From Selaginella moellendorffii (lineage: Eukaryota > Plantae > Lycopodiophyta), in assembly GCF_000143415.4 (NCBI RefSeq), contig NW_003314342.1, positions 206,074 to 270,073 of the forward strand: DNA of 64,000 nucleotides, given 5' to 3'. The position numbers were made by a program, and so were the translations under genes. Positions 637 through 51,407 of the stretch are shown here, piece by piece. The notes under the pieces are model-generated. The model made no database searches. It worked only from the letters and a program-made list of their open reading frames with translations, and was not told the DNA's origin. Position 1 is the first letter of the stretch, and each line of letters begins with the position of its first letter.

Positions 637-723
637 CGCGCCTCACTCGATCAAGACGAAATCACCACACTTTCACTTCTCTTATAATCCACAGGTTTTA
701 CTCTTAGAGTGGCAGCAATAGCG

Positions 724-918
724 ATGGACAAAATTCGTCTGGCTTGCCTTGGGCTTGTTGCCATGTTTGTGTTGCTCCTGGTAATGGGAGTGGACGTGGG
801 AGGAATCGCAAACGCTGCTGCCCAGCGCTGCCAGTCGGGGTGGTATTGGTATGACAATGGTTGCCACCGTTGCCCGAGGGGTTCGAGCTGGCGCAACAAT
901 CGCTGCTGGAGAAACTGA
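724..918 (+). CDS. Secreted Cys/Trp-rich peptide CRP-1 (64 aa, 2 modules)
   Basis: ATG 724. Hydrophobic signal peptide MDKIRLACLGLVAMFVLLLVMGVDVGGIANAAA, then QRCQSGWYWYDNGCHRCPRGSSWRNNRCWRN. TATA box at 628-636; several paralogues in the window. Confidence 0.85.
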   Translation: MDKIRLACLGLVAMFVLLLVMGVDVGGIANAAAQRCQSGWYWYDNGCHRCPRGSSWRNNRCWRN

Positions 919-1892
919 AGCCTCTGCTTTTAAGGGTAAGCGCAATTCTCAATTCAACTCGTAATCTCTATGAGTGCATTGCCAGGGTCTGGAAATAAGA
1001 ATAAAAGACACCGGACGGTAACATGTTTGTGTGGAACAAATAAAATTTTTTTTTGTCTTTTTCTTTCTTTTTTTTCTTTTTTGCTTCATCTCGAGAGTTT
1101 TGAGCTCCCGTGGCAATACTTCCTCATCGTCTAGCAACCTTTCTTCTTGGTTTACAAACTAGAAAATTAAGCTTTTTGGATCAATGGCTCATCTTCGTGT
1201 TGGGAATGGAACCCATGTTATGAGACAACCACATGATTTGCAGCTGGAAGTAACTCGCATGATGAAGGCGGCTACGAACGCATTATCGAGCAACATCAGG
1301 TTCGAGATAGTCGGAGGACCTCTTTCTTTTCGATTCGGTGCCACAGATAATCACGCAAGTAGCAGGATGACTCATGCCTCGAGGTGAGACAATCGATGCT
1401 ACTGGCTGATCGCAAATTGATCGACCACGTGGTAGAAGTGATTCCAAACACTCCAGCCAAATTTTCATTAATATCATATATTAAATCGACAATAAGAGCT
1501 GAGGGTGTCTATATACTCGAGCAACTATTGCCTGATAAATCTAACCAGAATTATATAACATTAAAATAGCATTAATAATGAAATTAACATTATATTATAG
1601 AGATATATGAGTGTATACTATTAAGTCGATGTGGAACGACGAAAAGCGTATTAGAAAACCAAATTGTCAATAAATCTGATCCTTCCCAAGACCAACCGAT
1701 GAGCCACAAAGTTACCCACAAACAATGCACGTGGAAACTTGCTTCGTCGCAAGGTGAGTATATAGATACCCCTCTCAGGAGAGGTTTCCACAATCTCTCT
1801 TCTAACAGATTCAGTGCTCAGAAGATCTTCGAAGAAGCTCTCTAATGCTTATTTGGTTTCTTGTTCTTTTCGCTTGCAATAGCGGTCCAGCG

Positions 1893-2099
1893 ATGAGGAA
1901 GAGTCAGTTGGTTTGCCTTGGGCTTGTTGCCATGTTTGTGATGATGCTGGCCATGGGAGTGGAAGGGGGAGGAAAGGTTGCTGCCCAGCGCTGCCAGAGA
2001 GGGTGGTACTGGTATTACAATGGTTGTCATGACTGCCCGAAATGCTGGTATTCCAAAGCGGCTGGAGCTGGGCCAATGGCCGCTGCTGGAAAAACTTAG
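1893..2099 (+). pseudogene. CRP-2, frameshifted copy
   Basis: Signal peptide and first module intact. Relative to CRP-5, a 25-nt deletion after TGGTATT (about 2052) shifts the frame; the shifted frame still reads QSGWSWANGRCWKN. Confidence 0.75.
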
Positions 2100-3406
2100 A
2101 TATCCGTAGTCATGCCAAAAGTCTATCAACATCATAATTCGGAAGGTTTTGTTTGAATGATGTAAGATCCTCCTAAATCCTAATTAGGATAAAACGATTG
2201 TTTGTGATCTGTTTAATTTCATCTGGAGTAGATTCTTGTCTCCAGTCACGGAGCTTTTCTTGCGTGGCAATTCTTTGGTTGTTATATAGCAAACAGAACA
2301 GCAAGAATTATGTTACTGATCTTTAAGTTTTTTGCGGTATTTGGCCAGCGCTGGTGTTCGGATAAGATAAGAATTGCCTGGTCTGCAAGCTCCAAAAACC
2401 GATCAAGCCAAGAGAATCTGGTGTATGTGGTTTTGTCCTTTAAAGTCCACAGGAATGTACTAACACGAACGCATGTTGTACAAGAGATCAGGCCAAGTTG
2501 GAACAAACGTATTACTAAAAACTATATGATTTATCGAAAGAGTGAACAGAATTACATAGCTAGCCAATGGTCATATTTTTATTCTTTCGTTGGTCCAAGT
2601 CAAACAGTGTAAAAGTCTGTAAAGAAAAAAACACATTGGTGGCAACACTGCTCTTCTCGACAAGCTCTCACAGCTCTACAGTCGCTTCCAACTGTAACAG
2701 CGTAAATTCCAGCACACCAGACTTTTCAAGGCCTGTGCGAATGCATTGAGAAAGAGGTCTCTGGAAACACCTGCAGTAACGAAGTAATTTAAGACTTTCG
2801 TGCGCTACCGTTTATGAGAAGCACAGCGAGCTCCATGAGCAGCAAAGGACCCCCTACAAACAAAGACATTGAGAAGATGGAAACAAAAACTAAGAGAGAA
2901 ATACCTGTGAGAGTGAGCTCATGCGAGACAAGCACCACAATCCTTCCACGCATAAAATGTAGGCCATGGGAAGGAGTATCGCGCCGCTCCCTCACTCACC
3001 AAAAGAAGCCCTAGAAATCCAAATGCCGCGACCCCCGAGCTTGAGAAGCGATCGCAATCCCACCTTGCGCTTGATCGCTCCTATTCCCGTCTAAAGAACA
3101 AAGAAAAAGATCTGCAATCCTGACCGTTCAAACTCAGCGTTGGCGATTATGCCAAGTGGCAACCGATTTTAACAAATGCAAACCTTAATTGAGTCTTTTC
3201 AAATGGTGGGCGCGAATTGTAATGAAAGACTTTGGCCTGGAGCCGCGCGGTCTTTGTATCTATCCACACACTCTCGACGCTATATAAACACCACATCTCT
3301 TACAATCCCCCACACTCTCTCTAGTGCTCCTTTGTTCTTTCGCTTTGGTTTGCTCTTTCTCTCTTCTCCAATTCCAATCAATCAATCAATCGATTGACCG
3401 ATTGCT

Positions 3407-3640
3407 ATGGCAAGCAGCAAGACTCGATTGGTGTGCCTGGGCCTGGTTGTGATGTTTGTGATGCTCCTGGCGGTGGGAGTGGAGGTCGGGGGGATCACCA
3501 AGGCGGTGGCGCAGCGCTGCCGCAGGGGATGGTACTGGAATGGATCTCGCTGCGTGCAATGCAATTGGTACTGGTATGACAACGGCTGCCATCGATGCCA
3601 GCGTGGGTGGCGCTGGAATGGCAGCCGCTGCGTCAATTAA
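3407..3640 (+). CDS. Secreted Cys/Trp/Arg-rich peptide CRP-3 (77 aa, 3 modules, middle one 12 aa)
   Basis: Signal peptide followed by QRCRRGWYWNGSRCVQCNWYWYDNGCHRCQRGWRWNGSRCVN. TATATAAA at 3281. Confidence 0.85.
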   Translation: MASSKTRLVCLGLVVMFVMLLAVGVEVGGITKAVAQRCRRGWYWNGSRCVQCNWYWYDNGCHRCQRGWRWNGSRCVN

Positions 3641-4373
3641 GGAAAGTTTGTGAGTGATCTCTGGGGCCTGGAACCATGGGAGCGAATGTCGAATGGGTGA
3701 AGAAGTACATAGAATAAAACTGTGGCTTCGAAACGGGAATGTTTTGGAGTCCTTGTGTGAAATCTATTCCGATGTTCAGGCTCTGAGATTATCAATGATA
3801 AATATGGTGTGTTTTCTGGAAAGTGGTTGTCGCAGTGTAACGTTCGCAAAATGCATGCATTTTTAATATATAACTTTGCATGCGATTTCATATATTCAGC
3901 CAACAAACTTTCCAACTGTGCAGAGAATGACCAAGAAAATCTTAACATTGACGTACACTAAAATAGAAAGAAAGCCAAATATTGAGATTGAAGAACAGGT
4001 GGTTCTTCAGAAATCTGGAATCAATCTATGCATGGATGTAAAGCGTCCAGCTTTCGGTAACATTATAAATGTAAACACAACAGTTCCAAAAGCAATATAA
4101 ATAGCTAAGTGTTTTTGTTTTGTCAATGAAAAGCTGTTTATTTTGTCCCGAGACTTTGCCATCCTAGTCTCGACGTGGAACTTAAAAGAAGATGCAAAAG
4201 CTCTGGCATGTGACACAGTAGTCAGGAGGCAAATTTGTCAACGAATCTGATCTCTTTTACAGACGAAGTCTAGCAGTTTTACCACATACGGCACAATTAT
4301 ACACACGGAAATTTGCTCGGTCGTTGCAAGGGACGTATATGAAACGCCCCTCTCAATCGAGACGAAATCATCA

Positions 4374-4548
4374 TTCGTCTGGCTTGCCTTGGGCTTGTTG
4401 CCGTGTTTGTGTTGCTCCTGGTAATGGGAGTGGACGTGGGAGGAATCGCAAACGCTGCTGCCCAGCGATGCCGGAGAGGGTGGACAAAGGTTGCCACCAC
4501 TGCCGAAAGGGTTGGAGCTGGCGCAACAATCGCTGCTGGAGAAACTGA
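4374..4548 (+). pseudogene. CRP-4, pseudogenised duplicate of CRP-1
   Basis: Near-identical to CRP-1 including flanks. The 5' UTR and ATG are deleted, and a 10-nt deletion (TATTGGTATG) frameshifts module 1. Confidence 0.8.
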
Positions 4549-5831
4549 AGTCTCTGCTTTTAAGGGTAAGCGCAATTCTCAATTCAACTCGTAATCTCTA
4601 TGAGTGCATTGCCAGGGTCTGGAAACAAGAATAAAAGACACCGGACTGATGTTTGTATGGAACAAATAAAATATATTTTTGTGTTTCTCTTTTTTCTGTT
4701 TTTTGCTTCATCTCTGGAGACACTGAAACTTCAGGTTTTAAGGGGTAAGTGCAATTCTCAAATCAACTCGTAATTTCTATGATTTCATCATGCTGCACTG
4801 TCAGGGTCTGGAAACAAGAATAAAAGACACTTTGTATCTTGCAGCAATAATAACATACATATAAAACTTTGCTTCATCTCGAGAGTTGTGAGCTCGGGTG
4901 GAATTACTTCGCAAACTTTCTTTGTTTACAAACTAGAAGATTAAGCCTTTTAGATCAATGTCTCATCTTCGTGTTGGGAATGGAACCATGAGATAAAGCC
5001 ACCTGATTTGCTTTACCGAGTAGAGCTTGCATGATGAAGCCGGCCACTGCATTATCGAGCAACATTGGGGGACCTCTTTCGTTTCGCTTGGGTGCCACAG
5101 ATAATCACACAGGTAGCAGGATGACTCATGCCTGGTATCACGAGAGACTTTGCATGATCCAAGTGGAAGGCATGCTTTCTATCTGCTGCGACCCAGCTCC
5201 TGCAAATTGATCGACCACATGGTAGAAGTGATTCCAAACACTCCAACATTATTAGTTGAAATTTCCATTAATATCACATACTAAATCGACAATAAGAGTT
5301 CAGGAACCTCTTGAGAGGGTGTCTATATACTCGCAACCGAGAAAGCATTTCCCGATCTAACTCGTACTTTACAGCAGAAGCAGCAGGGGCGATGAGCAAG
5401 ACCCTGATTTGTTGTTGCACCAAAAAGGTGCAGCAAATTGACTAACATTATATCAACGGCGCTCGTTTTGGAGCTTACTGCTACGACAGACTTTGTCAAG
5501 TCGTTGTGGAAGGACGAAAAGGTTATTTTTCCGTATTATTGAGAGTACTACGTACTTAGAAAATCAATTTGTCAACGGATCTGATCCTTCCCAAGACCAA
5601 GTCTAGCGAACGGCGCGCGTCAACCGATGGGACACAAAGTTATCCGCAAACAATGCACGCGGAAATTTGCTCGGTCGTTGCAAGGGCGAGTATATAGATA
5701 CCCCTCTCAAGAGAGGGTTCCACAATCTCTCTCCTGGCCATCATCCTGATTCAGTGCTCAAAGATCAGAAGAAGCTCTTTAATAGTTCTGATTTGGTTTC
5801 TTGTTCTTTTCGTCAGTCAAAGTATATAGCA

Positions 5832-6074
5832 ATGGCGATGAGCAAGACTCAGCTGGTTTGCCTTGGGCTTGTTTCCATGTTTGTGATGATGCTGGCCATG
5901 GGAGTGGACATGGGAGGAATCGCAAAGGTTGCTGCGCAGCGCTGTCCGATAGGGTGGTACTGGTATGACAATGGTTGTCACCCCTGCCTGAAAAACTGGT
6001 ATTGGTATGGCGGAAGCTGCCACCGATGCCAGAGCGGCTGGAGCTGGCGCAAAGGCCGCTGCTGGAGAAACTGA
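5832..6074 (+). CDS. Secreted Cys/Trp-rich peptide CRP-5 (80 aa, 3 modules)
   Basis: ATG 5832 (or 5838). Signal peptide followed by QRCPIGWYWYDNGCHPCLKNWYWYGGSCHRCQSGWSWRKGRCWRN; conserved promoter upstream. Confidence 0.85.
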   Translation: MAMSKTQLVCLGLVSMFVMMLAMGVDMGGIAKVAAQRCPIGWYWYDNGCHPCLKNWYWYGGSCHRCQSGWSWRKGRCWRN

Positions 6075-6854
6075 GGACTTTAAGCCCAAACACACCAAGT
6101 ATAAAAAGATATGATGCGATGTAAAAATGTTGTTATTAAACTATTTAACTCATCTCGAGAGTTTACTTAGATTCTTGTCTCCAGGCACTGAGCTTTTCCT
6201 GGATGGCAGTTCTTTCGCTCCTTATTTCATGTTGGTGTTGTTACGTAGCAAACGGAACAGCAAGAACAACAGATGCCGTAAACACAAAGATCAATTTACA
6301 GCATCAATTGTTGTCGTAGATCTATACCAGTCTTTTAGTTTTTTGGCGGTGTTTGGCCGGCGCTGGTGTTCGGATAAGATAGGAATTGCCTGGTCTGCAA
6401 GTTCCAAAACCCAACCTGATCAAGCCAAGAAGAAGCAATAATTTCGAGAGAGTCTAAAAGTAATGTATATGTTGTACCAGAGATCAGGCCAAGTTGTGTT
6501 GGAACAAACACAAAATTACTAAAAATTACATGATTCATCCACAGAGTGAACAGAAGAACACGGCTAGCCATATTCTTATCAATATTTCTTCTTTCCATTG
6601 GTCCAAGTCAAGAGCCGCTCAAACAGAAACAAGAGTCTGTACAAAAATCTCCCTGTATATACCGTGTATACACCGTGGCCACAAGTCTATTATAATTGAC
6701 TCTACATGTAATCTCTTCATACTTCTCGGCACTATAAATGCCTCCTCGGCCTTCATTGGCATCATCCATCCCAGAAATCAAAGCTTCTCACAGCAAACTT
6801 CTCTCCAAAATCTTTCTCATCTCACTCAACTCAATCAAGAAGAATTCTTCGCTA

Positions 6855-7226
6855 ATGGCAATGGTGGCGAGCTACTCTTCTCGCGTGGCCTTCATTGGAG
6901 TGGTAGTCGTGCTCCTCTTAATCGGCGTGGACGTTGGCAATGGCATCGCAAAGGCCCAGGCACAGAGCTGTCGGTCCGGTTGGCACTGGTCCGGTGGCAA
7001 GTGCATCCAATGCCCGGCCGGGTGGTACTGGTACAATAGCAGGTGTAACCAGTGCCTGTCCGGGTGGTACTGGTACAATGGCAAGTGCAACCAGTGCCAG
7101 TCCGGTTGGTACTGGTACAGTGGTAGCTGCCACCAGTGCCAGTCCGGTTGGTACTGGTACAACAACAGTTGCAACCGGTGCCCATTGGGGCGGAGCTGGA
7201 CTGGTACTGGCTGCTCCAAGAACTGA
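6855..7226 (+). CDS. Secreted Cys/Trp-rich protein CRP-6 (123 aa, 6 tandem 14-aa modules)
   Basis: ATG 6855, signal peptide ending GIAKAQA, six 42-bp repeats encoding CxxGWxWxxxxCxx. TATAAA at 6733. Confidence 0.85.
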   Translation: MAMVASYSSRVAFIGVVVVLLLIGVDVGNGIAKAQAQSCRSGWHWSGGKCIQCPAGWYWYNSRCNQCLSGWYWYNGKCNQCQSGWYWYSGSCHQCQSGWYWYNNSCNRCPLGRSWTGTGCSKN

Positions 7227-7624
7227 GGAAGAAATTTACCATTATTCCACATGGTAAAAAGAGATTATATGGTGTGTGCTTTGTTCTTTGTTTGTGTGAC
7301 TGGATTTCGTTTTTTTACTGTGTGTCGAAGTAAATAATGCCAAGGTTGTTTGGCAGAGTTTGATATCTTTTGTCTATTCGCTCTTTAAGAAATTTACCTT
7401 GTTTTATCCTTCGCGCTCTAAAGACGTAGACGATATCTTGGTAAATATTTCCAGGGTTTTTCGATGATGCTCGTCGAGGAGCGCCACTGGGAATCCGCGC
7501 GGCGCGGCGCGGCGAGCTGGATGCGCCGGATCGAGCGCCAGCGATTGATTCCCGTGGAATGCAGGTCCCGGGAGCTCGATCGGCTAATGCTGCCGGCAAC
7601 CCTAGGAGAGGGCGGTGATTTCAA

Positions 7625-14678: not shown

Positions 14679-14792
14679 TTATGACATATCAACGCCATTA
14701 TCGAGGGCATCAGCCATACCGTTGCGATTTCTCCCCACATCCACTCCCATGGCCAGCATCATCACAACAAACCATGGCCCCATGTTCTTCAT
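14679..14792 (-). pseudogene. CRP-7 relic (signal-peptide part only)
   Basis: Reads MKNMGPWFVVMMLAMGVDVG, then a 1-nt insertion and divergence. A family-type promoter with TATAAAT lies upstream (about 14867-14874, minus strand). Confidence 0.6.
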
Positions 14793-15252: not shown

Positions 15253-15450
15253 TCAGTTGTGCCAGCAGCGATTGTTGCACCAGACCCAACCCCTCTGGCA
15301 ACGGTGGCAACTGTTGTCATACCAATACCACCCCGACTGGCAGCGCTGGGCAGCAGCCTTTGCGATTCCTCCCACGTCCACGCCCATGGCCAGCACTATC
15401 ACAAACATGGCAAGCGCCAAAAACACCACCAAGAAAGCCTTGTTCTCCAT
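15253..15450 (-). CDS. Secreted Cys/Trp-rich peptide CRP-8 (65 aa, 2 modules); promoter inverted
   Basis: MENKAFLVVFLALAMFVIVLAMGVDVGGIAKAAA followed by QRCQSGWYWYDNSCHRCQRGWVWCNNRCWHN. Confidence 0.8.
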   Translation of the reverse strand: MENKAFLVVFLALAMFVIVLAMGVDVGGIAKAAAQRCQSGWYWYDNSCHRCQRGWVWCNNRCWHN

Positions 15451-16062
15451 GATTTGCTGCTCAGACTAAGATCAAGTAGGCTTGTAAATGCTAGAGTGAC
15501 TTTGGAGATAAGGATTTGAAGGATTGGAGAAGCATTATAGGAAAAAGAAGAATTGGCAAACACGGAACCACTTTTACTGGACTAACTTTCAAATATTCTT
15601 CCAGAGATAAGAAATAAGCGAAGCCGTCCCAAGACAACTGCCCAGCCACCATCTAAATTGTGCTGCCTCGAGCTATAAATACGAGCCCCTCCTGCCTCAC
15701 AGATCAAACCATTCCTCTTCTAGCTTTGCCAAAACTTTACAAGAGTTTGATTCAAAGTTCCATAGAACTTCCATGCTAATATAAACATGAACCTAATACC
15801 TTGTCTTCCGTTTCGACCACAGACTCAGTACGGCCGCTTCCAGTCACCCGCAACATTAATCAAAGTGGTTCGTCTTTTCTCACTGGCAGGCTCTTGACAA
15901 TCTCTTGGGCATTCTAGAGCAATCTGCAACAATTAATGGAAGTGATATCAATAATTATCAAGATTTTATTCATTAAAATTGTTTTTCTTATTTAATTTAC
16001 TTATAATTATTTTCTGTTATTCTATTAATTAAATGTTGTACTTGTTGACTCTTTAAATGGAC

Positions 16063-17424
16063 TCATGTGACGCAGCTGACATGAGCACGTAAAGCGCCAG
16101 AGTCCCCTGGTTTCATCTCCAAGAGTTTCTCTGCGGCACGAGCTGCAACATTGATGTTCTTGCCGTTACCACGAACTTTGCAAGCGCTGATGAAGCTCTT
16201 CCACGCGAGGAAATGCGGCTGGAAGGGCATCACCAGCAGCAGACCTTCGGCCTTGGCAACCAGCCCGGCCCGTCCCAGCACATCTGCCATCGCCTGGAAG
16301 TGAATCACATTTGGAGAAATACTGTACTCCGCCACCATAGATCGAAAGTAGTCGAGTGCCACACGGAGCTTCCCACCGTGATTGCAAGTCAGGAAAATCC
16401 CCTGGAAACTTATCTCGTTTCTCGCCTCGCCCTCCATCGCCATGCTGCCAGCAAACATCGCGCGCTGTGGCATCCGTGCAAACATCTTCCTGGCTTCTTC
16501 GAGGTGGCCGTGGTTGGAGTAGGCCAAGATCATGGCAGTCCACACCACGTCATCGTGATAAGGAGCTCGATGGAAGAGAATGCGAGCTTCTTCGAGCTGG
16601 TTTCTCTCGGCCAGTGCGGTGATCATTGTCGACCACGATGCAATGTTCCTCTGTGGCATGCCATCAAACAGAGACCTTGCTTCTTTCAGACTGGACGTTG
16701 CTGCTAGCATTGCGTTCCACGAGCTTAAGTCGCGGTGTGGCATTTTACTGAAAAGCTCTTTGGCTTTTTCCATATGCCCAAGCTGGGCATATGCAGTGAC
16801 AAGAACAGTCCATCCCAACTCGTTGGTTTCGGGGATTCTCATGAACAAATTTAGCACGTCGTTAAAAAATCTTTTCTGGAATACCCATTATACATAACAG
16901 TCCAAGAAACTAAGCATTCCATCAAAGATCTGGCTTGCTTGATCCATATGCCCCTTATGGGCATATGCTGTAAGTAGCGAGTTCCAGCAAACTACATCCC
17001 ATTCTAGAACACGATCAAACAATGCTTGGCACTCCTCCAAGTTTCCACGGTTTTCATGAGCCGTGAGAATAGAGACCCATGCAATAATATCTCTTTGTGG
17101 CAAACAGCTCTTTTGCTTCCTCAAGATCCGCATTTTGGGCATAAAGCGCCAAGCATCAAGTTCCAGGAGAATCTGTTGGGCTCATGGATGGCTGATAAAC
17201 ACCTGCCATGCTCGATCCCCGCGCTCGCACCTTCCTTAGAGCTGGATGAGAAGATTTGCGAGGTACCTGTTGGATTGGTGGTGAAGGATGAGCGCGTGGA
17301 GCCTGGCGCCATGACGCAAATCTCTTTTCTGGATGCAAGCTGCTGTGAGGAGTTGCGCGTAGTCGTCGTCGAGCGACAATGCACGCTGCTCTAGATCATC
17401 CACGGCCTGTTCTAGAGGCTTCAA
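16063..17424 (-). pseudogene. PLS/E-class pentatricopeptide repeat pseudogene
   Basis: PPR motifs (WNSLLTAYAHKGHMDQASQIFD, WTAMILAYSNHGHLEEARKMF) and an E-domain (MPFQPHFLAWKSFISACK) are spread over several frames with frameshifts and deletions. Confidence 0.8.
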
Positions 17425-17814: not shown

Positions 17815-17900
17815 TTATGATCCATACCAGCGCTATCCTCTAGGTGAGATTCCTCCCACATCCATGCCCATGGCAAGCATTACAAACATGACGAGCACCT
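17815..17900 (-). pseudogene. CRP-9 relic
   Basis: Minus strand reads MFVMLAMGMDVGGISPRG*RWYGS*: family signal peptide with a stop and lost modules. Confidence 0.55.
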
Positions 17901-18129
17901 AAAACAACAATCTTTTTGCTGCTAGTAAGCTTGTTATATACTAGGCTCATAGGGATGGCATCAGTTAGTTCTTATCTCTTTGAGTTCCGTGTTTGGGAAT
18001 TTCTTTTCTTTTTTTCTATAATGCTGGAAAAAAGAAGAAATTCCCAAACATGAAACTTGACGACAGAGTCCCAACACAACTTTATAGCTGCCTTGAACTA
18101 TAAATATGAGCCCTTTCTACTGTACAAAT

Positions 18130-20356
18130 CAAATTGTGCCAAGAGTGTGAGGAAAAGGGTACATACTTTGTTTAATTGACGATAGTTAATGTAGAAATAA
18201 ATACTCCTATCAAGCTTCATCACATGAGGTTCATATGCCTAAAGATTGCATGACTTTTGAATAACTCCATTTTCCAACATCTCCTTGACGTTTGCATATA
18301 AAATCTTGATCTTTTTGGGTAATTGACAACGAATAAAAACCTTAATTGAACAAGCATCCCCAGTTAGAATAAGATGATATGTTATAATCTTGGCTCTATA
18401 TGAGAAGTCAAATTCAAAGAAATTTGCATACTTCTCCATGAGTCGGTCAACCATTGCAATATAAAAACCGTCGGAGGGATTAGAAAAAGAAAGAGAGAAA
18501 CATAACAGAAACTTAGGAGAAAGTAATGGGGAGACAAAAGTGATGGAAGTAGAGGTAGAAGCAAAAGGACAAAGATGTATAAAAGTGAAAGGAATGGAAA
18601 AAATATCAAGAAGTATGAGACAAAAGGGAGAAACTTCAAATCATATTTGGCATGATTGTGCCACAACCAATTCATACTAATGATGAAGTCAAAAGCTTGA
18701 TTTAACACCACTTGCAATGACTATAACTCAAACTCGAAATTGCTTACATGCACAACTAAATCCGCTTCATCCCACACACATACATGTGTATGACCATTGC
18801 CATAAAGAATGAAAAATGGTTTTACCACATGACATAATGTAGATGGCAACGTGTGGCAACAAGTCAAGTAATAGAAGATAAACTTGAATCTATATTAACC
18901 AACACAAAAAGAATAATAAAAGACCTCTTGTTATAAAAACGAGTTTGGAAAATAAACATTGAATTAATTGGTGTTAAATGAACCCCTTAATGATACTCCT
19001 AAAAGAAAAATGGAAGGGTTATTGATTTATTTGTGCAATGTCCCTTTTGTTACTCACATGACTTTTGTTTTTCAAATGCATTTCAGTGTCTAGACCTTTC
19101 ACTACAGCAGTATCAACAAAACATTGTTGATGCTAATGTTGCAAATGTGACTTTAGGTGTCGAAAGTTACATGTTGGTTAGTCCTTTCAAATATTCTTTC
19201 CTTACTGCCATGACAATAGGAGGTCGGTATTGTTGGACCCTTTATTAGTCCTTCTTGTTCAAGTGTTAATAAACTAAACTTTGCATTTATATTTGGCCGG
19301 ATGAGCATAAGGATGGAATTCCTACATGTCTATTTAACTAAGTATATTTGGCCCGACTTGTTAGTTCTCTTTTGTTCTGTTTTATATTAGCTTGACAAGA
19401 ACCTTCGTGTATTGGGATTAGTCCCTCAATATTCATTAAATGATAACTTACCGTGTCTGCAAAACACCTTTACTATCATGCCCTTTGTATTAGTCTCATT
19501 TCGGTCCTAAATGCTATTTATAGAAAGTGTCTAGATTTACTCATTTGGTATAGATTGTCCTAAACATAATGGTGTTTATCCCATATCCAAATTCATAATT
19601 TAGGGACATTCCATATGTAATAAGTTTTAAACTTGTCCTAGAGCTTGTCCCAATCGTCAATATTTCCAAATGCACATTTGAAGACGTCCGGGAGAATACT
19701 CTAATCCTCATAAGTGGTTGTGCTCAAACCATTGTACCACTTTAGCATCATTGGAAACACACAGGAAACTCATGCAAATGTCAAATATCATCCCAATAAT
19801 GATATGCCCACAGAAGGAACTCTAGCCGAACTCGAGGATTGGCAGTAAGAGTAAGAAGAATTGCAAGCTACTATCAATTGAGTTTGGTTATTCAACTACA
19901 ATCATATAACATTGAACAATTGCACCAACTATTGCTCCAAAAACAAAGGAAGAGGAAATTGTTACTTTGCCATGAAGAGAGCAAAAGAAAAGAAATGGAA
20001 AAAGCTAGAAGGAAAAGGAGATCTAGACAATGCAAAAGCTAGATCTAAAAAAAAAGCAAAAGAAAAGAAATGGAAAAAACTAGAACAAAAGAGAGATTTA
20101 GACATTTCAAAAACTAAAACAAAAATCCCAAATCCAAGCACTCTTTAGGGACAATCAAAATTGCCCCTCATCTCCACCAATATGAGTGCATGGAACATAG
20201 AAAGAAAATATAAGAAATATACATATTAATTAACCCAGAAACCCTAGTTTATATACTGGAGTGAGTGGTCTAGATTGAAATCAATATGATATCTATCAAA
20301 ATCCCACTATATTAATATTAGTATACAGTATTGTAACTATATACTTGAACTTCACA
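18130..20356 (-). mobile_element. Truncated degenerate Ty3/Gypsy element with 176-bp LTR and tRNA-Ala-type PBS
   Basis: LTR 20181-20356 (TGTGAAG...CACTCATA on minus), PBS TGGTGGAGATGAGGGG, decayed gag, protease (FDFIISMNWL) and start of RT (VKEMLENGVIQKS). Confidence 0.7.
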
Positions 20357-21088: not shown

Positions 21089-22187
21089 TCAACATTCTAA
21101 TGGTAGCCTCAAAAACCTCTTGAAGTCCTTGCAATAGTCATATATCATCCAATTATCTTTGACCCATTAAAGCTTGTGTGTGGTACCCTCATCCTTAACC
21201 AAAAACATTGGACTTTCCCACCACTTTGGAGGCCTCCTTGTCTTAGTGCAAGATCTTGGAGAACTCGATGACCACTTGCAAGCATCGATCCCAAACCCCC
21301 GAAAAGATGCCACAAATGGGGATTTGTTCCACTTGATCTTCTCTAATCCTCCACGAGTAGCCCAATCGTCCCCATTCCACAGGCTGGCGTAAACGCCCAT
21401 TGGTTTCGTGAGTGGAAATGGAACGCCAAGCTCCGCCATCTTGTTGGCAACACGCGGATTGGCACGTCGTCCACGTAGAGTCTTGTTGTAATGGCGAGAA
21501 AAAATAAATAAACATTCTGAAAAGAATCTTGGGCTTCTAGACTTACATAATTTGCGGACGGTTCCAGAGGATTGAGTACGTATGAAAGTCGGCAGTGGGA
21601 TCAACCAGAGATAGATCTGCTGCTCTCGATCACCTGTTCCGTTTGCAAAGATGTTGGTGTGGACAATGTAAGGTTGGCCGCTGGTGTTTCCCAAGAACTC
21701 AAAGTCAATCTCATCGTGGTCTTTGGATGGCATCTGTGAAGACATCTAAGAAAGTAAAGGAGCAAAATTCAACAAGGTTATCCCAGGATAGAATGGAGAA
21801 TAAGTTTTCTTACATAGAACGTTGTCACCGTCCCGGCGGATTCATTGGCGACGAGCTTGATTCTCATGCTCACATACCCAAAGAGATACTTGTTTTTGGA
21901 AGCAAATCCCGAGCCTCCTGTATGGAAGATTCATACAAAGAATGTTGATATCTCTCTTACATTTGGAAGAAGAAAATGATATGCTAACCCGTGTTGTTGG
22001 TGAGAAGGAGCTGGAGCTGTGATCCTAGATTCATCAGCCTGGTGTTGCTACTCCCCCAGCTGACCTGATAATTCCTGGCAAACTTGCAGTCGGACAACCT
22101 CCTGGGCGTTTGTTGGGTCGACACCAATGATCCCGCGATCATCATCATCAAACTTGTCATGGGCAATAAAACTTTGCGTGGATCCAT
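21089..22187 (-). pseudogene. XTH: Xyloglucan endotransglucosylase/hydrolase (GH16) pseudogene
   Basis: Four-exon XTH layout with catalytic HDEIDFEFLGN, LWNGDDWATRGG and C-terminal MIYDYCKDFKRF..EC. Two 1-nt frameshifts (about 21603 and 21448) and an in-frame TAA at 21167. Confidence 0.85.
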
Positions 22188-28323: not shown

Positions 28324-30036
28324 TCAGAGCTGGAAAATTGTGGTGGTGGAGCTGATCGCGTTGTAGATGAGCGTCCCCGCTGTGGGAGTGAACTGCTTGG
28401 TCACCAGCTTGATGGCTTCCTGCGACGCAATCCCCCCGACGACAGCGCCAACGCAGTGGATCTCCCCGCCTCCAAACCGGCAAAACTCGTACACGAGCTC
28501 CTCCGAGACGCCACCGTCCAGTCCAATCTCGCCCGCCAGTTTGTGCGCAATCGCCCCGACCTTGGCCGCGTCCTCCTCCACCGTCTCGTCCGCCATAGCC
28601 CCCGGGAACCTCCCAAACTCTTCGGCGAATCTGTCCACCGCTCGAAACATGAGGTAGATCGCGTAGTTTGTGTTGTCTCCCTCGAACGGGAGATACTTCT
28701 GGAGCTTGGCCCCGACCTCTTTCAAGCCCAGCTCCTCCGCCAGCGAGCGGTACCTCAGCACCCTCAAGTTCCTCGAGTTCTTGCAAAAGTGCTTGATCGC
28801 GGCCCTGGAGATGGAGTCCGGATCTCTTCCCAGCTGCGAGAGGATGCTCCTTACGTGGGCTTCCACGGCCGAGACATCCGACTCGGCCTTGGCCTGGTAG
28901 CAGCGCTGGAGGAGGATGTAGTACTCGGTGAAAGAATGCATGTCCGGGATGGCACCGTCGAGTGGAAACTCTCCGCCACCCTCCGAGGCCACGAATCTCT
29001 TGAGCGCCGCCACGAGTATCCAAAAGTCCGAGGAGCTAGAGTCGACGTCGGCAGCGCCGTCTTCCAGGATGGCTTTCACTTCCGAGCTCAGCGATGGCGG
29101 AGACCAGACTTTGCTCGCCGCCGCCACCGCCTCCTTGTAGTTGTCCTCGTCCTGTGCCTGCTTCTTCGACGCCACCAGGGACTTAAACTCGGATCTCTCC
29201 TTGGTGGTCGACGGGAGAGCGCCGCCGTGCTTGCTCCTCCACTCCTCACACACCTTGAGAAGGATGATCGCGAAAGGGATGTGCTTGTGGACGAGAGAGT
29301 CCTCGGTCTCCAAGTTAAACTCTTCGACGAACGTGGTGAGCTCCGGCCATGGCCTGTGGAGCCGGAGATCGCTCACGGTGTTGTCGGGCTTGCTCTCGAT
29401 CACCGCGTGCTCGCGGAGGCTGATCCTCACGTACCCGGTCAGTCCATAGGATCGCGCGACGAGCAGCATCACGGAGAAGCGCCGGCAAACCTCGTCCAGG
29501 ATCACCAAGCTCCTGTCACGCATCTGGGTGGCGATCACGAGCGTGAACCTCGCGAAGAATCCCGGGTCGGAGTCAAGCAGAGACTCGGGCGAGGCGTCGA
29601 TGTGGTCGATCAACACCGAGTCGTTCATCTCCTGGAGCAATGCGGCCATGCTCTTGGCTCGCGGCTGGCCTAGATTCTCGGCGCTGAGGAGGAAATTGTT
29701 GCCAAGGTCGGATTCATGGACCAATCCCCCGTCCACGGCCGTGACATTGCCAATCCCTCCCAGGACGAGATTCTTGAGCGCCTCGCTGCCCGTGGCTCCG
29801 CAATTCAAGAGGCAGACGCTGGCTTGCTCCAGCGCGCCCTGCCCGTGCTCGCCCCAAATCCGGAGCTGCCGATCATACTTGTTGCTCCTCGTCGCCGCCG
29901 CCGCCGCCGCCTTCTTTTGCTCGTCGCCGCTGCCGCCATTGGCGTGCGCCATCAAACCTGGGCAGTGGCGAATCGCAGCAGCCCCGTCGCGCTCCTCCTT
30001 GCCCGCCGCTGCTGCCTCCTCCCGCTCGCGTTTCAT
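28324..30036 (-). CDS. AXR1: NEDD8/RUB-activating enzyme E1 regulatory subunit (AXR1/NAE1), intronless
   Basis: KYDRQLRIWGEHGQ, LLNCGATGSEALKNLVLGG, HKHIPF, PLDGAIPDM and GGIASQEAIKLVTKQFTP in one 570-aa ORF. Confidence 0.93.
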   Translation of the reverse strand: MKREREEAAAAGKEERDGAAAIRHCPGLMAHANGGSGDEQKKAAAAAATRSNKYDRQLRIWGEHGQGALEQASVCLLNCGATGSEALKNLVLGGIGNVTAVDGGLVHESDLGNNFLLSAENLGQPRAKSMAALLQEMNDSVLIDHIDASPESLLDSDPGFFARFTLVIATQMRDRSLVILDEVCRRFSVMLLVARSYGLTGYVRISLREHAVIESKPDNTVSDLRLHRPWPELTTFVEEFNLETEDSLVHKHIPFAIILLKVCEEWRSKHGGALPSTTKERSEFKSLVASKKQAQDEDNYKEAVAAASKVWSPPSLSSEVKAILEDGAADVDSSSSDFWILVAALKRFVASEGGGEFPLDGAIPDMHSFTEYYILLQRCYQAKAESDVSAVEAHVRSILSQLGRDPDSISRAAIKHFCKNSRNLRVLRYRSLAEELGLKEVGAKLQKYLPFEGDNTNYAIYLMFRAVDRFAEEFGRFPGAMADETVEEDAAKVGAIAHKLAGEIGLDGGVSEELVYEFCRFGGGEIHCVGAVVGGIASQEAIKLVTKQFTPTAGTLIYNAISSTTTIFQL

Positions 30037-30158
30037 GCCTGGAGCATCGGCGCAAACCCTAGCCTGTCCCCGGAAGAACCCTAAAATGGTAAAGCCCTAG
30101 TACGCATCACCTTTTCAGCTGGCAAAAATACGAAGTAAATTTCGCACCCTAAAATCTT

Positions 30159-31901
30159 TTACCTGCCTTTCAGCTGATCGTAGAAAGTAACTACCTCGGG
30201 GTGAACTCGGATCTTGAGGGGATCGAATCCCAGTAGCCGCAGTCCGTGCAAGCTCCGTACTCTAGAGAGCGCGACGTACACCATGCCGTACTCAAAGGTC
30301 CTGGAGAGGTCCGTCTCCACGCAGTCGAGCGTCATCCCCTGGCACTTGTGGACGCTCAAAGCCCACGCCAGGATCAATGGAAGCTGCAATCTCTTGGCCA
30401 CTTCCACCTCGCCTTCCATGACGCTCCACGCCTCCGGCCGGATGATCCACTCGCTAGAACCCGAGTGATTGAATCGCACCACCGGGAGTCCTCCGCCTGG
30501 CGAGATCCGGAGCTCGCTCTTCTCCGGGGCCGTGAAGCCCACCACGATCCCGCGAGCTCCATTCACGAGCCCCTGCTCGGTGCCGAGGTTCTTGATGAGC
30601 ATCACTTGGGCTCCGATCGCGAGCGTGATCTCGGCTTCCGCGCGGCTGCCGTTGAGCATCTGTGTTCTTCCCGAGTCCTTGGCGGAGAAGGTGACGGACT
30701 TTGACGATGGGTTGAGTGACCGGAGCTTCTGCTCGTTCTCGCGGTCGACGTCGGCTCGCCGGGGATAGAGTCGCGTCGGCTCGATGCCTGGAGCAGTGGA
30801 GATGCTTGTGCAAGACTTGAGCCTCGTCTCGGTGGCGAAAGAGCACTCGCCGCGGCGGATCTCGTTGAGCATCCCGACGAACTCCCGATCAGACTGGCGG
30901 AAAACCTGTGTCAGCTCCATCTGGAGATCGAAGCATTCCTTCCAGCACTTCGCGTTGAAGACGAACGACTTGGTCTCTCCGGGCTTTTGAACTGGCGGGA
31001 GCTGAAAGAAATCGCCGGTGACGATCAGCTGCAAGCCACCGAAACGCTCTTTGCTCCTCCTCACGGCTCGCCCCACAAAGTCCACCTTGTCGAAGAGCTC
31101 CGCGTCGATCATGCTTATCTCGTCAATCACCAGAGCCGCAGCGTTGAGCCATCTCTGTTTCTTCTCCTTGCTTCTCATCACCATGTCGACAAGCTGCTCC
31201 TTCTTCGAGAGCCCAATGCCCACTCCAGCGAAAGCGTGAAAGGTAGTACCACCGATCGCGCACGCAGCAATCCCGGTTGACGCTGTCACGTAAACTGCCG
31301 ATGGATGGTAGACAGTCCTCAAAACTTGGATGGCTCTCTCGAGAATATAGCTCTTTCCTGTTCCAGCCGAGCCCGTCACAAAGACCGATTGCCTGTTACA
31401 CACAGCCTCCAAGACCCTGAGCTGCTCGGGAGAAGGAGTAGCCTCTTTCGTCTCAAAGTTGCCATTTTTGTTGCCAGAAGAAGTTCCTTCGTCCGCGGTG
31501 CCCATCTTCACTGCCTTGCAAGGACCAAAACTTTCTTTCTCGGGACTTGGCCGCTTTCTAGTCTCCCTCCAGCCTTCACTCTCCAAGTTCCTCACAAGAG
31601 TATCTTCTTTCCGGACGAGCGGCGGCGCTGGAATGCTGGGCTGAGCTCTGACGGTGGAATGGATAACTTCATCGTCCGATTCCCCTAGAACGATCACTTC
31701 CGGCTTCGATTTGGACGACTCACGAATGGGGCTGCTCGTAATATCGATCACTTCCTGCTGGGATGGTGTAGGAACCAGCGTACTACCTGACATTCTCGCC
31801 TGTCGCCGCGCAAGCGCCAGGTCCCTCTGCCGTAGGGCTCGATTTCTCTGCTGTTCCGTCAATACCCTCGACTGATCGTCTTTCAGCATGATCACATCCA
31901 T
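30159..31901 (-). CDS. PIF1: PIF1-family 5'-3' DNA helicase
   Basis: GSAGTGKS, TASTGIAA, DEISM, GDFFQLPPV, LVNGARG, LAWALSVHKCQGMTLD and YVALSR motifs. Probable 5' UTR intron at about 31910-31966. Confidence 0.93.
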   Translation of the reverse strand: MDVIMLKDDQSRVLTEQQRNRALRQRDLALARRQARMSGSTLVPTPSQQEVIDITSSPIRESSKSKPEVIVLGESDDEVIHSTVRAQPSIPAPPLVRKEDTLVRNLESEGWRETRKRPSPEKESFGPCKAVKMGTADEGTSSGNKNGNFETKEATPSPEQLRVLEAVCNRQSVFVTGSAGTGKSYILERAIQVLRTVYHPSAVYVTASTGIAACAIGGTTFHAFAGVGIGLSKKEQLVDMVMRSKEKKQRWLNAAALVIDEISMIDAELFDKVDFVGRAVRRSKERFGGLQLIVTGDFFQLPPVQKPGETKSFVFNAKCWKECFDLQMELTQVFRQSDREFVGMLNEIRRGECSFATETRLKSCTSISTAPGIEPTRLYPRRADVDRENEQKLRSLNPSSKSVTFSAKDSGRTQMLNGSRAEAEITLAIGAQVMLIKNLGTEQGLVNGARGIVVGFTAPEKSELRISPGGGLPVVRFNHSGSSEWIIRPEAWSVMEGEVEVAKRLQLPLILAWALSVHKCQGMTLDCVETDLSRTFEYGMVYVALSRVRSLHGLRLLGFDPLKIRVHPEVVTFYDQLKGR

Positions 31902-50364: not shown

Positions 50365-51407
50365 ATCTCTAGTATACTAGCGAGAGGTGGTTTGATCTGT
50401 GTTGCCCATCATATTTATAGCTCAAGACACTAGAATGCTCTTGGGAAGGCATCTAGAATATTTGAAAGTTAGTTGCTCTATGTTTGTCAATTCCTTCTCT
50501 TTTCTATATTCCTGGGGCCGCTGGGGCATGGATGAAGTTTGCAACACGAAGAAGGAAGTAAAACTGCCACGCAAGAAAAACTCAGTCAGCAGGCCTGGAG
50601 TCAAAATGAAGTAAACTCTTGAAATGAAGCTGTGAATCCAGATGAGAAATAGAGAGAACAGACATTTTTTATCAAGGCCTAATTGTTGGATCTCATGCAA
50701 TGCCATACAGAAAACTATTCTTCTTTCCAGACCCTACTGCAGAATAATGAATTCAGAGGAACGATGCTGGGGTTTACCCCTTGAAACGGGAGGTTTCAGT
50801 TGCGCCAGCAGCGATTGTTGCACCAGACCCAACCCGTCTGGCAACGGTGGCAACTGTTGTCATACCAAAACCACCCCGACTGGCAGCGCTGGGCAGCAGA
50901 CTTTGCGATTCCTCCCACGTCCACGCCCATGGCCAGCACCATCACAAACATGGCAAGCGCCAAAAACATCACCAAGAAAGCCTTGTTCTCCATGATTTGC
51001 TGCTCAGACTAAGATCAAGTAGGCTTGTATATTAGAGAGAAATGGTTTGATCTGTGAGGCAGGAGGGGCTCGTATTTATAGCTCGAGGCAGCACAATTTA
51101 GATGGAGGCTGGAGAGTTGTCTTGGGACGGCTTCGCTTATTTCTTATCTCTGGAAGAATATTTGAAAGTTAGTCCCGTAAAAGTGGTTCCGTGTTTGCCA
51201 ATTCTTCTTTTTCCTATAATGCTTCTCCAATCCTTCAAACCTTATCTCCAAAGTCACTCTAGCATTCCTCTTCTAGCTTTGCCAAAACTTTACAAGAGTT
51301 TGATTCAAAGTTCCATAGAATATAAACACGAACCACTTTGATTAATGTTGCGGGTGACTGGAAGTGGCCGTACTGAGTCTGTGGTTGAAACGGAAGACAA
51401 GGTATTA
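50365..51407. repeat. Segmental duplicate of 14818-15873
   Basis: High identity over about 1 kb including the CRP gene and flanks, apart from two inverted blocks. Confidence 0.9.
50796..50993 (-). CDS. Secreted Cys/Trp-rich peptide CRP-10 (65 aa, 2 modules)
   Basis: MENKAFLVMFLALAMFVMVLAMGVDVGGIAKSAA followed by QRCQSGWFWYDNSCHRCQTGWVWCNNRCWRN. Correctly oriented TATAAAT at 51074-51080. Confidence 0.85.
   Translation of the reverse strand: MENKAFLVMFLALAMFVMVLAMGVDVGGIAKSAAQRCQSGWFWYDNSCHRCQTGWVWCNNRCWRN

What the first reader, a model, noticed from the sequence alone, without database searches (positions are those of the whole stretch)
724..7226. Tandem cluster of an apparently unclassified modular secreted peptide family (C-x2-G-W-x-W-x4-C repeats)
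Seen: six tandem genes, plus four dispersed copies, share a signal peptide ending G-I-A/T-x-A/V-x-A. The mature part starts with Gln and consists only of 2, 3 or 6 copies of a 14-aa module (C-x10-C, CxxC junctions, GWxW core); every intact copy ends in Asn. Known: this Cys spacing does not fit the classic plant CRP classes (defensin, thionin, nsLTP, hevein, knottin, snakin, alpha-hairpinin, RALF). Inference: each module may form a disulfide-closed beta-hairpin with an aromatic face and Arg/Lys charge, like cationic Trp/Arg hairpin antimicrobials or carbohydrate-binding minidomains. That would make it a lineage-specific defence or signalling peptide system whose valency is tuned by repeat number.
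Basis: partly seen in the sequence, partly recalled or inferred. Interest (0 to 1): 0.9.

Follow-up and report, generated by a model that had tools for sequence, protein, structure and literature searches.

The report
Unannotated spikemoss Trp/Cys hairpin-repeat peptide genes
A spikemoss (Selaginella) genome carries a cluster of tiny, unannotated but transcribed genes for secreted, positively charged peptides made of 2, 3 or 6 copies of a 14-residue tryptophan/cysteine unit. The family is undescribed, its fold is a shrunken version of a known cysteine-rich repeat, and its job (probably defence or wall binding) is untested.

Summary
The window has ten copies of one gene type. Six are intact: 2, 3, 3 and 6 modules in the tandem array, plus two dispersed 2-module genes. 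Four are dead: two frameshifted and two fragments. All intact copies share a hydrophobic leader ending G-I-A/T-x-A/V/S-x-A, then Gln, then only 14-aa modules, and all end in Asn.

Stranded RNA-seq covers the intact genes and not the spacers. The transcripts are single-exon, about 400-600 nt, each behind a TATA box. Old gene pairs give dN/dS of 0.13-0.27.

No annotated small-protein relative exists among 5.8 billion protein clusters, no Pfam family is reached, and I found no paper on the family. The fold, however, is not new. AlphaFold models (pLDDT 82-83) give a ladder of beta-hairpins, and three independent structure searches all return ephrin-receptor-like/TNFR-like cysteine-rich repeats. 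The best solved match is the Chlamydomonas mastigoneme protein MST1.

So this is a new, lineage-specific secreted-peptide family on a known scaffold. A defence, wall-binding or signalling role is inferred, not shown. The scan had already found the same family in two other arrays of this genome.

The parts
724..918 (+). g1: intact 64-aa precursor with 2 modules (mature 31 aa, charge about +5). A TATATA box lies at 628.
   Evidence: RNA reads cross-mapped on g4 carry loose ends identical to window 703-732, so g1 is transcribed.
1893..2099 (+). g2: pseudogene of the g5 type. It has a 6-bp deletion in the leader and a 25-bp deletion in module 2 that shifts the frame.
   Evidence: Raw-read depth is about 0-0.4.
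3407..3640 (+). g3: intact 77-aa precursor with 3 modules (the middle one is C-x8-C). It has two N-G-S sequons. TATA box at 3281.
   Evidence: Stranded RNA depth reaches 34-50, and transcript contigs span 3328-3807.
4373..4548 (+). g4: pseudogene of the g1 type. The start codon region is lost and module 1 has a 10-bp deletion.
   Evidence: Reads laid here are 95-99% alike and carry loose ends from paralogues.
5832..6074 (+). g5: intact 80-aa precursor with 3 modules. A TATATAG box lies at 5691.
   Evidence: RNA contigs span 5735-6128. The AF2 model of the mature part has pLDDT 82.
6855..7226 (+). g6: intact 123-aa precursor with 6 modules (mature 87 aa; 12 Cys, 11 Trp, 8 Tyr). TATAAAT box at 6733.
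   Evidence: RNA contigs span 6792-7381, and raw reads are present in run X15 only. The AF2 model has pLDDT 83.
15253..15450 (-). g7: intact 65-aa precursor with 2 modules and a fifth Cys (GWVWCNNRC).
   Evidence: It lies in a 0.67-kb duplicate of the g10 locus, and its upstream 236 bp is inverted.
50796..50993 (-). g10: intact 65-aa precursor with 2 modules and a fifth Cys. A TATAAATA box lies upstream.
14694..14767 (-). g8: leader-only remnant.
17818..17940 (-). g9: degenerate remnant with stop codons.

Best explanation
These are single-exon, TATA-driven genes of a spikemoss-specific family of secreted cysteine-rich peptides.

Shown: the ORFs are conserved, transcribed on the sense strand and evolving under purifying selection.

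Inferred from sequence: a 33-36-aa N-terminal leader is removed, most simply after the A-x-A. The leader has a short positively charged start and an 18-residue hydrophobic core. The product then starts with Gln and ends with Asn.

Predicted (AlphaFold): the mature chain is a rigid ladder of 2, 3 or 6 beta-hairpins, each built as strand W-x-W-x, a two-residue turn, then strand x-C-x-x. Each 14-aa period is probably stapled by its C-x10-C pair. This is a minimal form of the ephrin-receptor-like/TNFR-like/furin-like cysteine-rich repeat.

Inferred function: a thin ladder has no core, so the Trp and Tyr side chains (about 20% of residues) must lie on its faces. Together with a net charge of +3 to +7, they would form a sticky aromatic-cationic surface whose length is set by module number. 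I take the peptides to act outside the cell by binding microbial envelopes or wall polysaccharides, most likely as defence peptides. Birth-and-death turnover in tandem arrays is typical of plant antimicrobial CRPs.
For: - Ten copies with invariant Cys/Gly/Trp positions.
- Stranded RNA-seq covers g3, g5 and g6 at depths of about 5-50, with zero depth in the spacers. Transcript-sized contigs appear in two further studies, no intron joints are seen, and g1 is covered by inference.
- A TATA box lies 45-60 nt upstream of each contig start.
- dN/dS is 0.13-0.27 for pairs with saturated dS and 0.45-0.71 for younger pairs. Modules 2-5 of g6 differ more at synonymous than at non-synonymous sites.
- The hydrophobic leader reaches a Kyte-Doolittle mean of 2.6-3.4 over 15 aa, followed by A-x-A|Q.
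- Mature pI is 8.8-9.7.
- AF2 pLDDT is 83 and 82 with regular hairpins.
- Fold matches all point to one class. Foldseek on PDB gives MST1, ELAPOR1, EphA2 CRD, TNFRs and CaSR CRD. VIA-align gives Z 4.6 over 89 residues of MST1. All ten ESM Atlas rows carry Ephrin_rec_like or TNFR_ELAPOR1, with TM 0.56-0.66.
- phmmer finds 220 Cys-repeat proteins at E<=1e-3. Of the ten I scanned against Pfam, three carry Ephrin_rec_like or VSP.
- Four of the ten copies are dead, and there are block duplications.
Against: - No functional data of any kind exist here.
- The cleavage site was not run through a signal-peptide predictor. V-M-G| or V-G-G| are also possible, and the strongly conserved G-V-D-V-G-G-I-A stretch hints at more than a generic leader.
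- The disulfide pairing and the exposure of the aromatics could not be read, because model coordinates are not returned.
- The structure matches are weak in absolute terms (E 2e-3, Z<5), as is usual for small disulfide-rich folds. The alignments used for folding contained ephrin-like repeats, which may bias the models.
- Tissue or stress specificity is unknown because run labels are coded.
- g7 and g10 have an odd number of Cys.
Confidence: 0.5

Rival explanations
1. The peptides are lectin-like or CBM-like binders of the plant's own cell wall. The aromatic ladder would dock on cellulose, pectin or other polysaccharides, and multivalent forms would cross-link or coat the wall or target wall enzymes. 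The role would be structural or regulatory rather than antimicrobial.
For: - Trp/Tyr rows on flat beta surfaces are how type A carbohydrate-binding modules work (established knowledge).
- The one annotated relative, P0046 = XP_024531936.1 of S. moellendorffii, joins the same leader and one module to an acidic linker and a pectinesterase domain.
- A GH16 wall-enzyme gene lies in the window.
Against: - The pectinesterase fusion leaves three Cys in the peptide part and breaks module 2. It may therefore be a merged gene model, and its locus could not be fetched.
- CBM14 appears only at Z 2.2.
- Rapid gene death and relaxed dN/dS in young pairs fit defence better than housekeeping wall roles.
Confidence: 0.2
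2. The peptides are signalling ligands for receptor kinases, like EPF, RALF, LURE or SCR/SP11, acting in development or reproduction.
For: - Small secreted CRPs in tandem arrays are often such ligands (established knowledge).
- Expression differs between samples. g6 is present in run X15 and absent in X14, and seven runs with the same species label hold none of the words.
Against: - Copies varying between 2, 3 and 6 near-identical modules with about 20% aromatic residues are unusual for a specific ligand.
- No receptor gene is linked in the window.
Confidence: 0.15
3. The genes encode polyprotein precursors that are cut into single 14-aa hairpin peptides, as with the Impatiens Ib-AMPs or multi-domain cyclotide precursors.
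For: The precursors carry repeated, near-identical modules.
Against: - Modules abut through only two residues (C-x-x-C), with no spacer, acidic propeptide or dibasic site.
- In the models the junction lies inside a beta-strand.
- The terminal Asn is the last codon, so no tail is available for asparaginyl-endopeptidase cyclisation.
Confidence: 0.03
4. The ORFs are non-functional: chance ORFs in a repeated or transposon-derived segment.
For: Four of the ten copies are broken, and the copies lie in duplicated blocks.
Against: - Six ORFs stay open at dS>1, with dN/dS 0.13-0.27 and invariant Cys/Trp.
- Sense-strand transcripts are confined to the genes.
Confidence: 0.03

Closest known systems
Ephrin-receptor-like cysteine-rich repeats (Pfam PF07699 Ephrin_rec_like/GCC2_GCC3). 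The best solved example is the 'Sushi'/ephrin-CRD-like domains of the Chlamydomonas mastigoneme protein MST1 (8tx1, 8wa2), which PMC10602792 says resemble the ephrin receptor cysteine-rich domain.
   Same: - Extracellular ladder of disulfide-stapled beta-hairpins with the pattern C-x-x-C-(P)-x-G-aromatic.
- All ten ESM Atlas structure rows and the top PDB rows belong to this class.
- phmmer hits carry this domain.
   Different: - The Pfam score is 16 bits against a cut-off of 23.1.
- The period is 14 aa with a single Cys pair instead of about 45-aa units.
- Trp takes the place of the usual Tyr/Thr.
- The peptides are free-standing, 31-87 aa, not domains of large surface proteins.
TNFR-type cysteine-rich domains (A1 modules, C-x2-G-x-Y/F-x4-9-C), class C GPCR NCD3G domains and the TNFR-like domain of ELAPOR1.
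   Same: The single-disulfide 'finger' module has Gly and an aromatic residue in the same places. TNFRs, CaSR, mGluR and ELAPOR1 recur in the structure searches.
   Different: Only sub-threshold Pfam hits are found (TNFR_ELAPOR1_6th E 0.17-0.29). The VIA-align Z is 2-4.5. TNFR domains alternate A and B modules with three disulfides per roughly 40 aa.
Furin-like repeats of R-spondin and EGFR-type receptors.
   Same: Beta-hairpin units of the form C-x-x-C-x-x-G-aromatic-Y...C. The best, non-significant, PDB sequence match is R-spondin-2 (E 0.32). Furin-like_2 gives E 0.014.
   Different: The hits are below every threshold, and furin repeats are longer and irregular.
Plant secreted cysteine-rich peptide families in tandem arrays (defensins, thionins, snakins/GASA, hevein-likes, DUF26/Gnk2).
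   Same: Leader plus small cationic Cys-rich product, tandem arrays with birth-and-death turnover, and genes often missed by annotation.
   Different: No Pfam hit to any of them at E<=10. The strictly periodic 14-aa module and variable module number are unlike them. DUF26 has one C-x8-C-x2-C motif per roughly 100-aa alpha/beta domain.
Unnamed 14-aa repeats in microbial proteins: P0002 (a 728-aa protein of a bacterial metagenome genome, with C-N-R-C-P-x-G-Q-H-Y-Y-N-x-R repeats), P0048, and the small membrane proteins P0152/P0153 on virus-like contigs.
   Same: Identical 14-aa period, CxxC junction, Gly and aromatic positions. P0152 contains A-G-W-Y-W-Y-D-N-A-C-H-R-C, almost the g1/g5 module.
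   Different: The organisms are unrelated, the plant leader is absent, and the repeats sit in large or membrane-anchored proteins. Shared descent as opposed to convergence of a simple motif is undecided.

Membership tests
Pfam PF07699 Ephrin_rec_like | Score at or above the Pfam gathering cut-off (23.1 bits). | tested here: not met
   The best score is 16.0 bits, E 0.011, for g6 only. The other copies give no hit.
Pfam PF07699 Ephrin_rec_like | Fold: elongated stack of disulfide-linked beta-hairpins, as in the Eph receptor CRD and the MST1 Sushi-like domains. | tested here: met
   The AF2 models have pLDDT 83 and 82. Foldseek gives TMq 0.52-0.59 to MST1. VIA-align gives Z 4.6 over 89 of 90 residues. 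Ten of ten Atlas rows match at TM 0.56-0.66. The scores are weak in absolute terms, and both sides of the Atlas comparison are predictions.
Pfam PF07699 Ephrin_rec_like | Disulfide connectivity of the domain. | not testable with these tools
   Model coordinates are not returned. Disulfide mapping or NMR is needed.
TNFR cysteine-rich domain (PF00020 TNFR_c6) | A roughly 40-aa CRD with six Cys (A1+B2 modules) that reaches the Pfam cut-off. | tested here: not met
   There is no TNFR_c6 hit at E<=10. The modules carry two Cys per 14 aa. TNFR structures reach only Z 2-2.8.
Furin-like repeat (PF15913 Furin-like_2) | Score at or above the Pfam cut-off (28 bits). | tested here: not met
   The score is 16 bits, E 0.014. 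R-spondin-2 gives E 0.32 in the PDB sequence search.
Classic plant CRPs (defensin, thionin, nsLTP, hevein, snakin/GASA, RALF, DUF26) | Family-specific Cys spacing recognised by the Pfam model. | tested here: not met
   None of these families is listed for g1, g3, g5 or g6 at E<=10.
Secreted cysteine-rich peptide (generic class) | N-terminal hydrophobic signal sequence with a small-x-small cleavage motif. | tested here: inconclusive
   A 15-aa window has a Kyte-Doolittle mean of 2.6-3.4, and A-x-A precedes Gln in all six intact copies. No signal-peptide predictor was available, and other cleavage sites are possible.
Secreted cysteine-rich peptide (generic class) | Small mature product with an even number of conserved Cys, and a gene that is expressed. 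| tested here: met
   Mature peptides are 31-87 aa with 4, 6, 6 and 12 Cys (g7 and g10 have 5). Sense-strand RNA was detected.
Cationic beta-hairpin antimicrobial peptides (tachyplesin, protegrin, arenicin) | A single 17-21-aa amphipathic hairpin cross-braced by 1-2 disulfides, with demonstrated membrane activity. | not tested
   Only the charge (+3 to +7) and aromatic content resemble them. The architecture is a multi-hairpin ladder, and no activity data exist.

The most novel reading that the evidence does not exclude
A land plant has cut the ephrin-receptor/TNFR-type cysteine-rich fold down to a free-standing 14-residue, single-disulfide hairpin. It uses strings of 2-6 such hairpins as a new class of multivalent aromatic-ladder binders, for example a new carbohydrate-binding or microbe-binding peptide type, with affinity set by module number. 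The same minimal unit would have arisen independently, or been exchanged, in bacterial and viral surface proteins.
Probability: 0.2. Interest if true: 0.7.

Novelty: new variant of a known kind. Interest (0 to 1): 0.45.

Why it matters
- The result adds an unannotated, expressed gene family to a model lycophyte genome and shows again that small secreted peptide genes escape annotation.
- The peptides would be about the smallest stand-alone form of the ephrin-receptor-like/TNFR-like cysteine-rich scaffold.
- They come as a natural series of 2, 3 and 6 modules, which is a convenient system for testing how valency affects binding or antimicrobial strength.
- The peptides are short enough (31-45 aa) to synthesise.
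- This is not a surprise in kind. Lineage-specific CRP families are common in plants, and the fold class is known.

Tried and rejected
Sequence searches:
- Word-indexed homologue searches with g5 and with the family profiles A2 and A3 found no plant relative. They returned only two small membrane proteins from virus-like contigs.
- Exact look-ups of the six precursors and of six neighbouring ORFs found nothing. The organism name therefore rests on the scan notes and on the Selaginella paralogue P0046.
- Encoding contigs for P0046 and g6 were not on record. The pectinesterase fusion could therefore not be checked.
- The protein-language-model atlas gave no usable hit.
- PDB sequence searches with the profile and with g6 gave nothing significant.

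Literature:
- Six full-text searches found no description of the family.

Readings considered and rejected:
- DUF26/Gnk2. It shares a C-x8-C-x2-C motif, but that motif occurs once per roughly 100-aa alpha/beta domain, and there is no Pfam hit.
- AEP-type cyclisation. The Asn is the last codon, so there is no tail to cleave.
- C-mannosylation. The motif here is W-x-W, not W-x-x-W.
- Processing into single modules. There are no linkers between modules.

Limits of the reads work:
- The g7-g10 pair shows 6 non-synonymous and 0 synonymous changes, which is too few to claim positive selection. The CDS has 3.0% substitutions against 5.3% plus indels in the 3' flank.
- Read laying was given 5,651 letters.

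Full report
**What is there**

A six-frame pattern search and tblastn with the four obvious ORFs found ten copies of one gene type in the window.

Six copies lie head to tail on the + strand between 724 and 7226:
- g1, 724-918: 2 modules.
- g2, about 1893-2099: broken.
- g3, 3407-3640: 3 modules.
- g4, about 4373-4548: broken.
- g5, 5832-6074: 3 modules.
- g6, 6855-7226: 6 modules.

Four copies lie on the - strand further on:
- g7 (15253-15450) and g10 (50796-50993): intact, 2 modules each.
- g8 (about 14694-14767) and g9 (about 17818-17940): leader remnants.

DNA alignment shows how the two tandem pseudogenes are broken. g2 has a 6-bp deletion in the leader and a 25-bp deletion in module 2. 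g4 has lost the start codon region and has a 10-bp deletion in module 1.

Self-BLAST shows that a two-gene block was duplicated: 565-1500 matches 4243-5298, and 1647-2603 matches 5551-6611. g7 and g10 sit in a 0.67-kb duplicate that is 91.7% identical. A scan note says the array continues to the left of the window.

**The protein pattern**

Every intact precursor has the same layout:
- a short start with Lys or Arg;
- an 18-residue hydrophobic stretch (Kyte-Doolittle mean 2.6-3.4 over 15 aa);
- the conserved stretch G-V-D/E-V/M-G-(N)-G-I-A/T-x-A/V/S-x-A;
- then Q-R/S-C and nothing but modules.

In 17 full module cores, C1, W7 and C12 are invariant, G4 is present in 16 and W5 in 15. Modules are joined by two residues, giving C-x-x-C. 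All six genes end three or four codons after the last Cys, and all end in Asn.

The putative mature peptides are 31, 42, 45, 87, 31 and 31 aa long. Their pI is 8.8-9.7 and their net charge is +3 to +7. Trp plus Tyr makes up about a fifth of the residues.

The middle module of g3 is two residues short. Three modules lack the full GWxW. g10 has Ser at the fifth leader position. g7 and g10 carry a fifth Cys.

**Are they genes?**

I laid window 1750-7400 (5,651 letters, within the operators' limit) against two raw stranded RNA-seq runs and two sets of contigs from other studies.

- Depth is confined to the genes. It reaches 34-50 on g3, about 2-6 on g5 and about 5 on g6 (run X15 only).
- Depth is zero in the spacers.
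- The first mate lies on the - strand, which in the usual stranded libraries means the RNA is from the + strand.
- A separate patch at 2506-3072 has the opposite orientation, so the libraries are indeed stranded.
- The contigs are transcript-sized: 3328-3807, 5735-6128 and 6792-7381.
- No GT..AG joint lies inside or between the genes. The listed joints carry foreign letters and are cross-mapping paralogues.
- Reads laid on the pseudogene g4 have loose ends identical to window 703-732, the 5' end of g1. g1 is therefore transcribed.
- Other loose ends belong to a g7/g10-like paralogue that is not in this window.
- A TATA box lies 45-60 nt upstream of each contig start.
- The reads differ from the window at a few sites, as expected for another haplotype or accession.

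**Constraint**

Whole-gene Nei-Gojobori estimates give dN/dS of 0.13-0.27 for the old pairs (dS above 1) and 0.45-0.71 for the younger pairs with dS 0.3-0.5. Modules 2-5 of g6 differ more at synonymous sites (17-60%) than at non-synonymous sites (10-16%).

g7 and g10 differ by six non-synonymous and no synonymous changes. This is too few to interpret. Their coding sequence has 3.0% substitutions and no indels, against 5.3% plus 34 gap positions in the 3' flank.

None of them is met.

**Organism**

The neighbours are plant genes: PPR, GH16, and ThiF and PIF1 ORFs. The only annotated protein with the same leader is XP_024531936.1 of Selaginella moellendorffii (P0046). Its stretch G-V-D-V-G-G-I-A-N-A-A-A-Q is identical to that of g1. 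Scan notes name the genome as S. moellendorffii. I could not confirm this independently by exact look-up.

**Relatives by sequence**

None of the six precursors is in the 15-billion-protein collection. Word-indexed searches with g5 and with two family profiles found no plant relative.

An exhaustive phmmer search with g6 found 220 proteins at E<=1e-3. Almost all are large proteins in which the query matches several repeated stretches. I scanned ten of the hits against Pfam. Three carry Ephrin_rec_like, TNFR_ELAPOR1, NCD3G or Giardia VSP domains. One is the pectinesterase P0046, one has only a weak DUF4813 hit, and five have no Pfam domain.

One hit, P0002, is a 728-aa protein of a bacterial metagenome genome. 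It has about 14 repeats of exactly the same 14-aa period. P0152 and P0153 are small membrane proteins on virus-like contigs that contain an almost identical module.

Pfam itself gives only sub-threshold hits: Ephrin_rec_like at 16 bits against a cut-off of 23.1, Furin-like_2 at 16 against 28, and TNFR_ELAPOR1_6th. No classic plant CRP family appears at E<=10. PDB sequence searches are not significant; R-spondin-2 and the EphA2 CRD are the best hits.

**Fold**

AlphaFold2 models of mature g6 (pLDDT 83) and mature g5 (pLDDT 82) show a regular ladder of hairpins: strand W-x-W-x, a two-residue turn, then strand x-C-x-x. The hairpin therefore spans the CxxC junction. The C-terminal C-W-R-N forms the last strand, which explains why every gene stops where it does.

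The structure searches agree with each other:
- Foldseek against the PDB lists the Chlamydomonas mastigoneme protein MST1, then ELAPOR1, thyroglobulin, the EphA2 CRD, many TNF receptors and the CaSR cysteine-rich domain.
- The Foldseek-independent search gives MST1 residues 1662-1768 as best, with Z 4.6, 89 residues aligned and 27% identity.
- All ten rows of the ESM Atlas search carry Ephrin_rec_like or TNFR_ELAPOR1, with TM 0.56-0.66.

The MST1 paper states that these MST1 domains resemble the ephrin receptor cysteine-rich domain (PMC10602792).

There are three caveats. The absolute scores are low. The folding alignments included ephrin-like repeats. I could not read the disulfide pairing or side-chain exposure.

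**Interpretation**

Shown: this is a real, expressed and constrained gene family that is unannotated and, as far as six literature searches go, undescribed.

Predicted: the product is a minimal ephrin-receptor-like/TNFR-like hairpin ladder.

Inferred: the peptides are secreted and start with Gln. They display Trp/Tyr and positive charge on the surface and bind something outside the cell. I favour defence (0.5 for the whole statement), because of the cationic and aromatic character and the birth-and-death pattern.

Wall or polysaccharide binding is the main rival. It would gain weight if the pectinesterase fusion in XP_024531936.1 is real. That model keeps only one and a half modules and three Cys, so it may be a merged gene model.

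Processing into single modules is unlikely because there are no linkers. AEP cyclisation is unlikely because Asn is the last codon.

**Standing**

The scan had already met this family in two other arrays of the same genome (s1-434241 and s1-431115), with the same conclusion. This window adds a third array and two dispersed copies. I rate it a new family on a known scaffold, of moderate interest.

Noticed in passing
window 15487-15722 versus 51033-51266: Directly upstream of the otherwise collinear g7 and g10 duplicates, a 236-bp segment is 97% identical but inverted. g10 keeps a TATAAATA box about 70 nt before its ATG. g7 has only a weak TATAAT there, so g7 may have lost its promoter.
   Followed up: partly
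P0046 (XP_024531936.1, S. moellendorffii 'putative pectinesterase 11'): The annotated protein begins with the family's leader and one and a half modules, then continues into a poly-Asp linker and a pectinesterase domain. It is either a real domain fusion or a merged gene model. The locus could not be fetched.
   Followed up: partly
L002 5014-5268 and L003 2624-2875 (P0153, P0152): Small 83-84-aa proteins on densely packed, one-strand, virus-like contigs. They carry a two-module ectodomain (C-x-x-A-G-W-Y-W-Y-D-N-A-C-H-R-C-...) almost identical to the plant module, followed by a membrane helix.
   Followed up: partly
L001 3001-5187 (P0002): A bacterial metagenome genome encodes a 728-aa protein with about 14 tandem 14-aa C-N-R-C-P-x-G-Q-H-Y-Y-N-x-R repeats. 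No Pfam model recognises them. The gene lies next to pilin-like and housekeeping genes.
   Followed up: partly
window 7140-7203: Three RNA reads and one contig join 7140 to 7203 with CC in between. This is an in-frame loss of 20 codons with no intron ends. It would give a g6 variant with four full modules and a short C-P-G-T-G-C loop, probably an allele or paralogue.
   Followed up: partly
window 2506-3072: There is a low-level transcript of the opposite orientation between g2 and g3 (depth 1-3, first mate on +). Its nature is unknown.
   Followed up: no
window 16063-16857, 21167-21745, 28324-31901: The neighbouring ORFs are a PPR protein, a GH16 (xyloglucan-transferase-like) fragment, and adjacent ThiF-family and PIF1-helicase ORFs. 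The last two lie in a 57% G+C block that may be a mobile element.
   Followed up: no
window 18144-18452; also 44170-44461, 59711-60012, 61941-62218: A dispersed repeat of about 300 bp occurs in four copies at 79-83% identity. An assembly gap of 794 N lies at 44915-45708.
   Followed up: no
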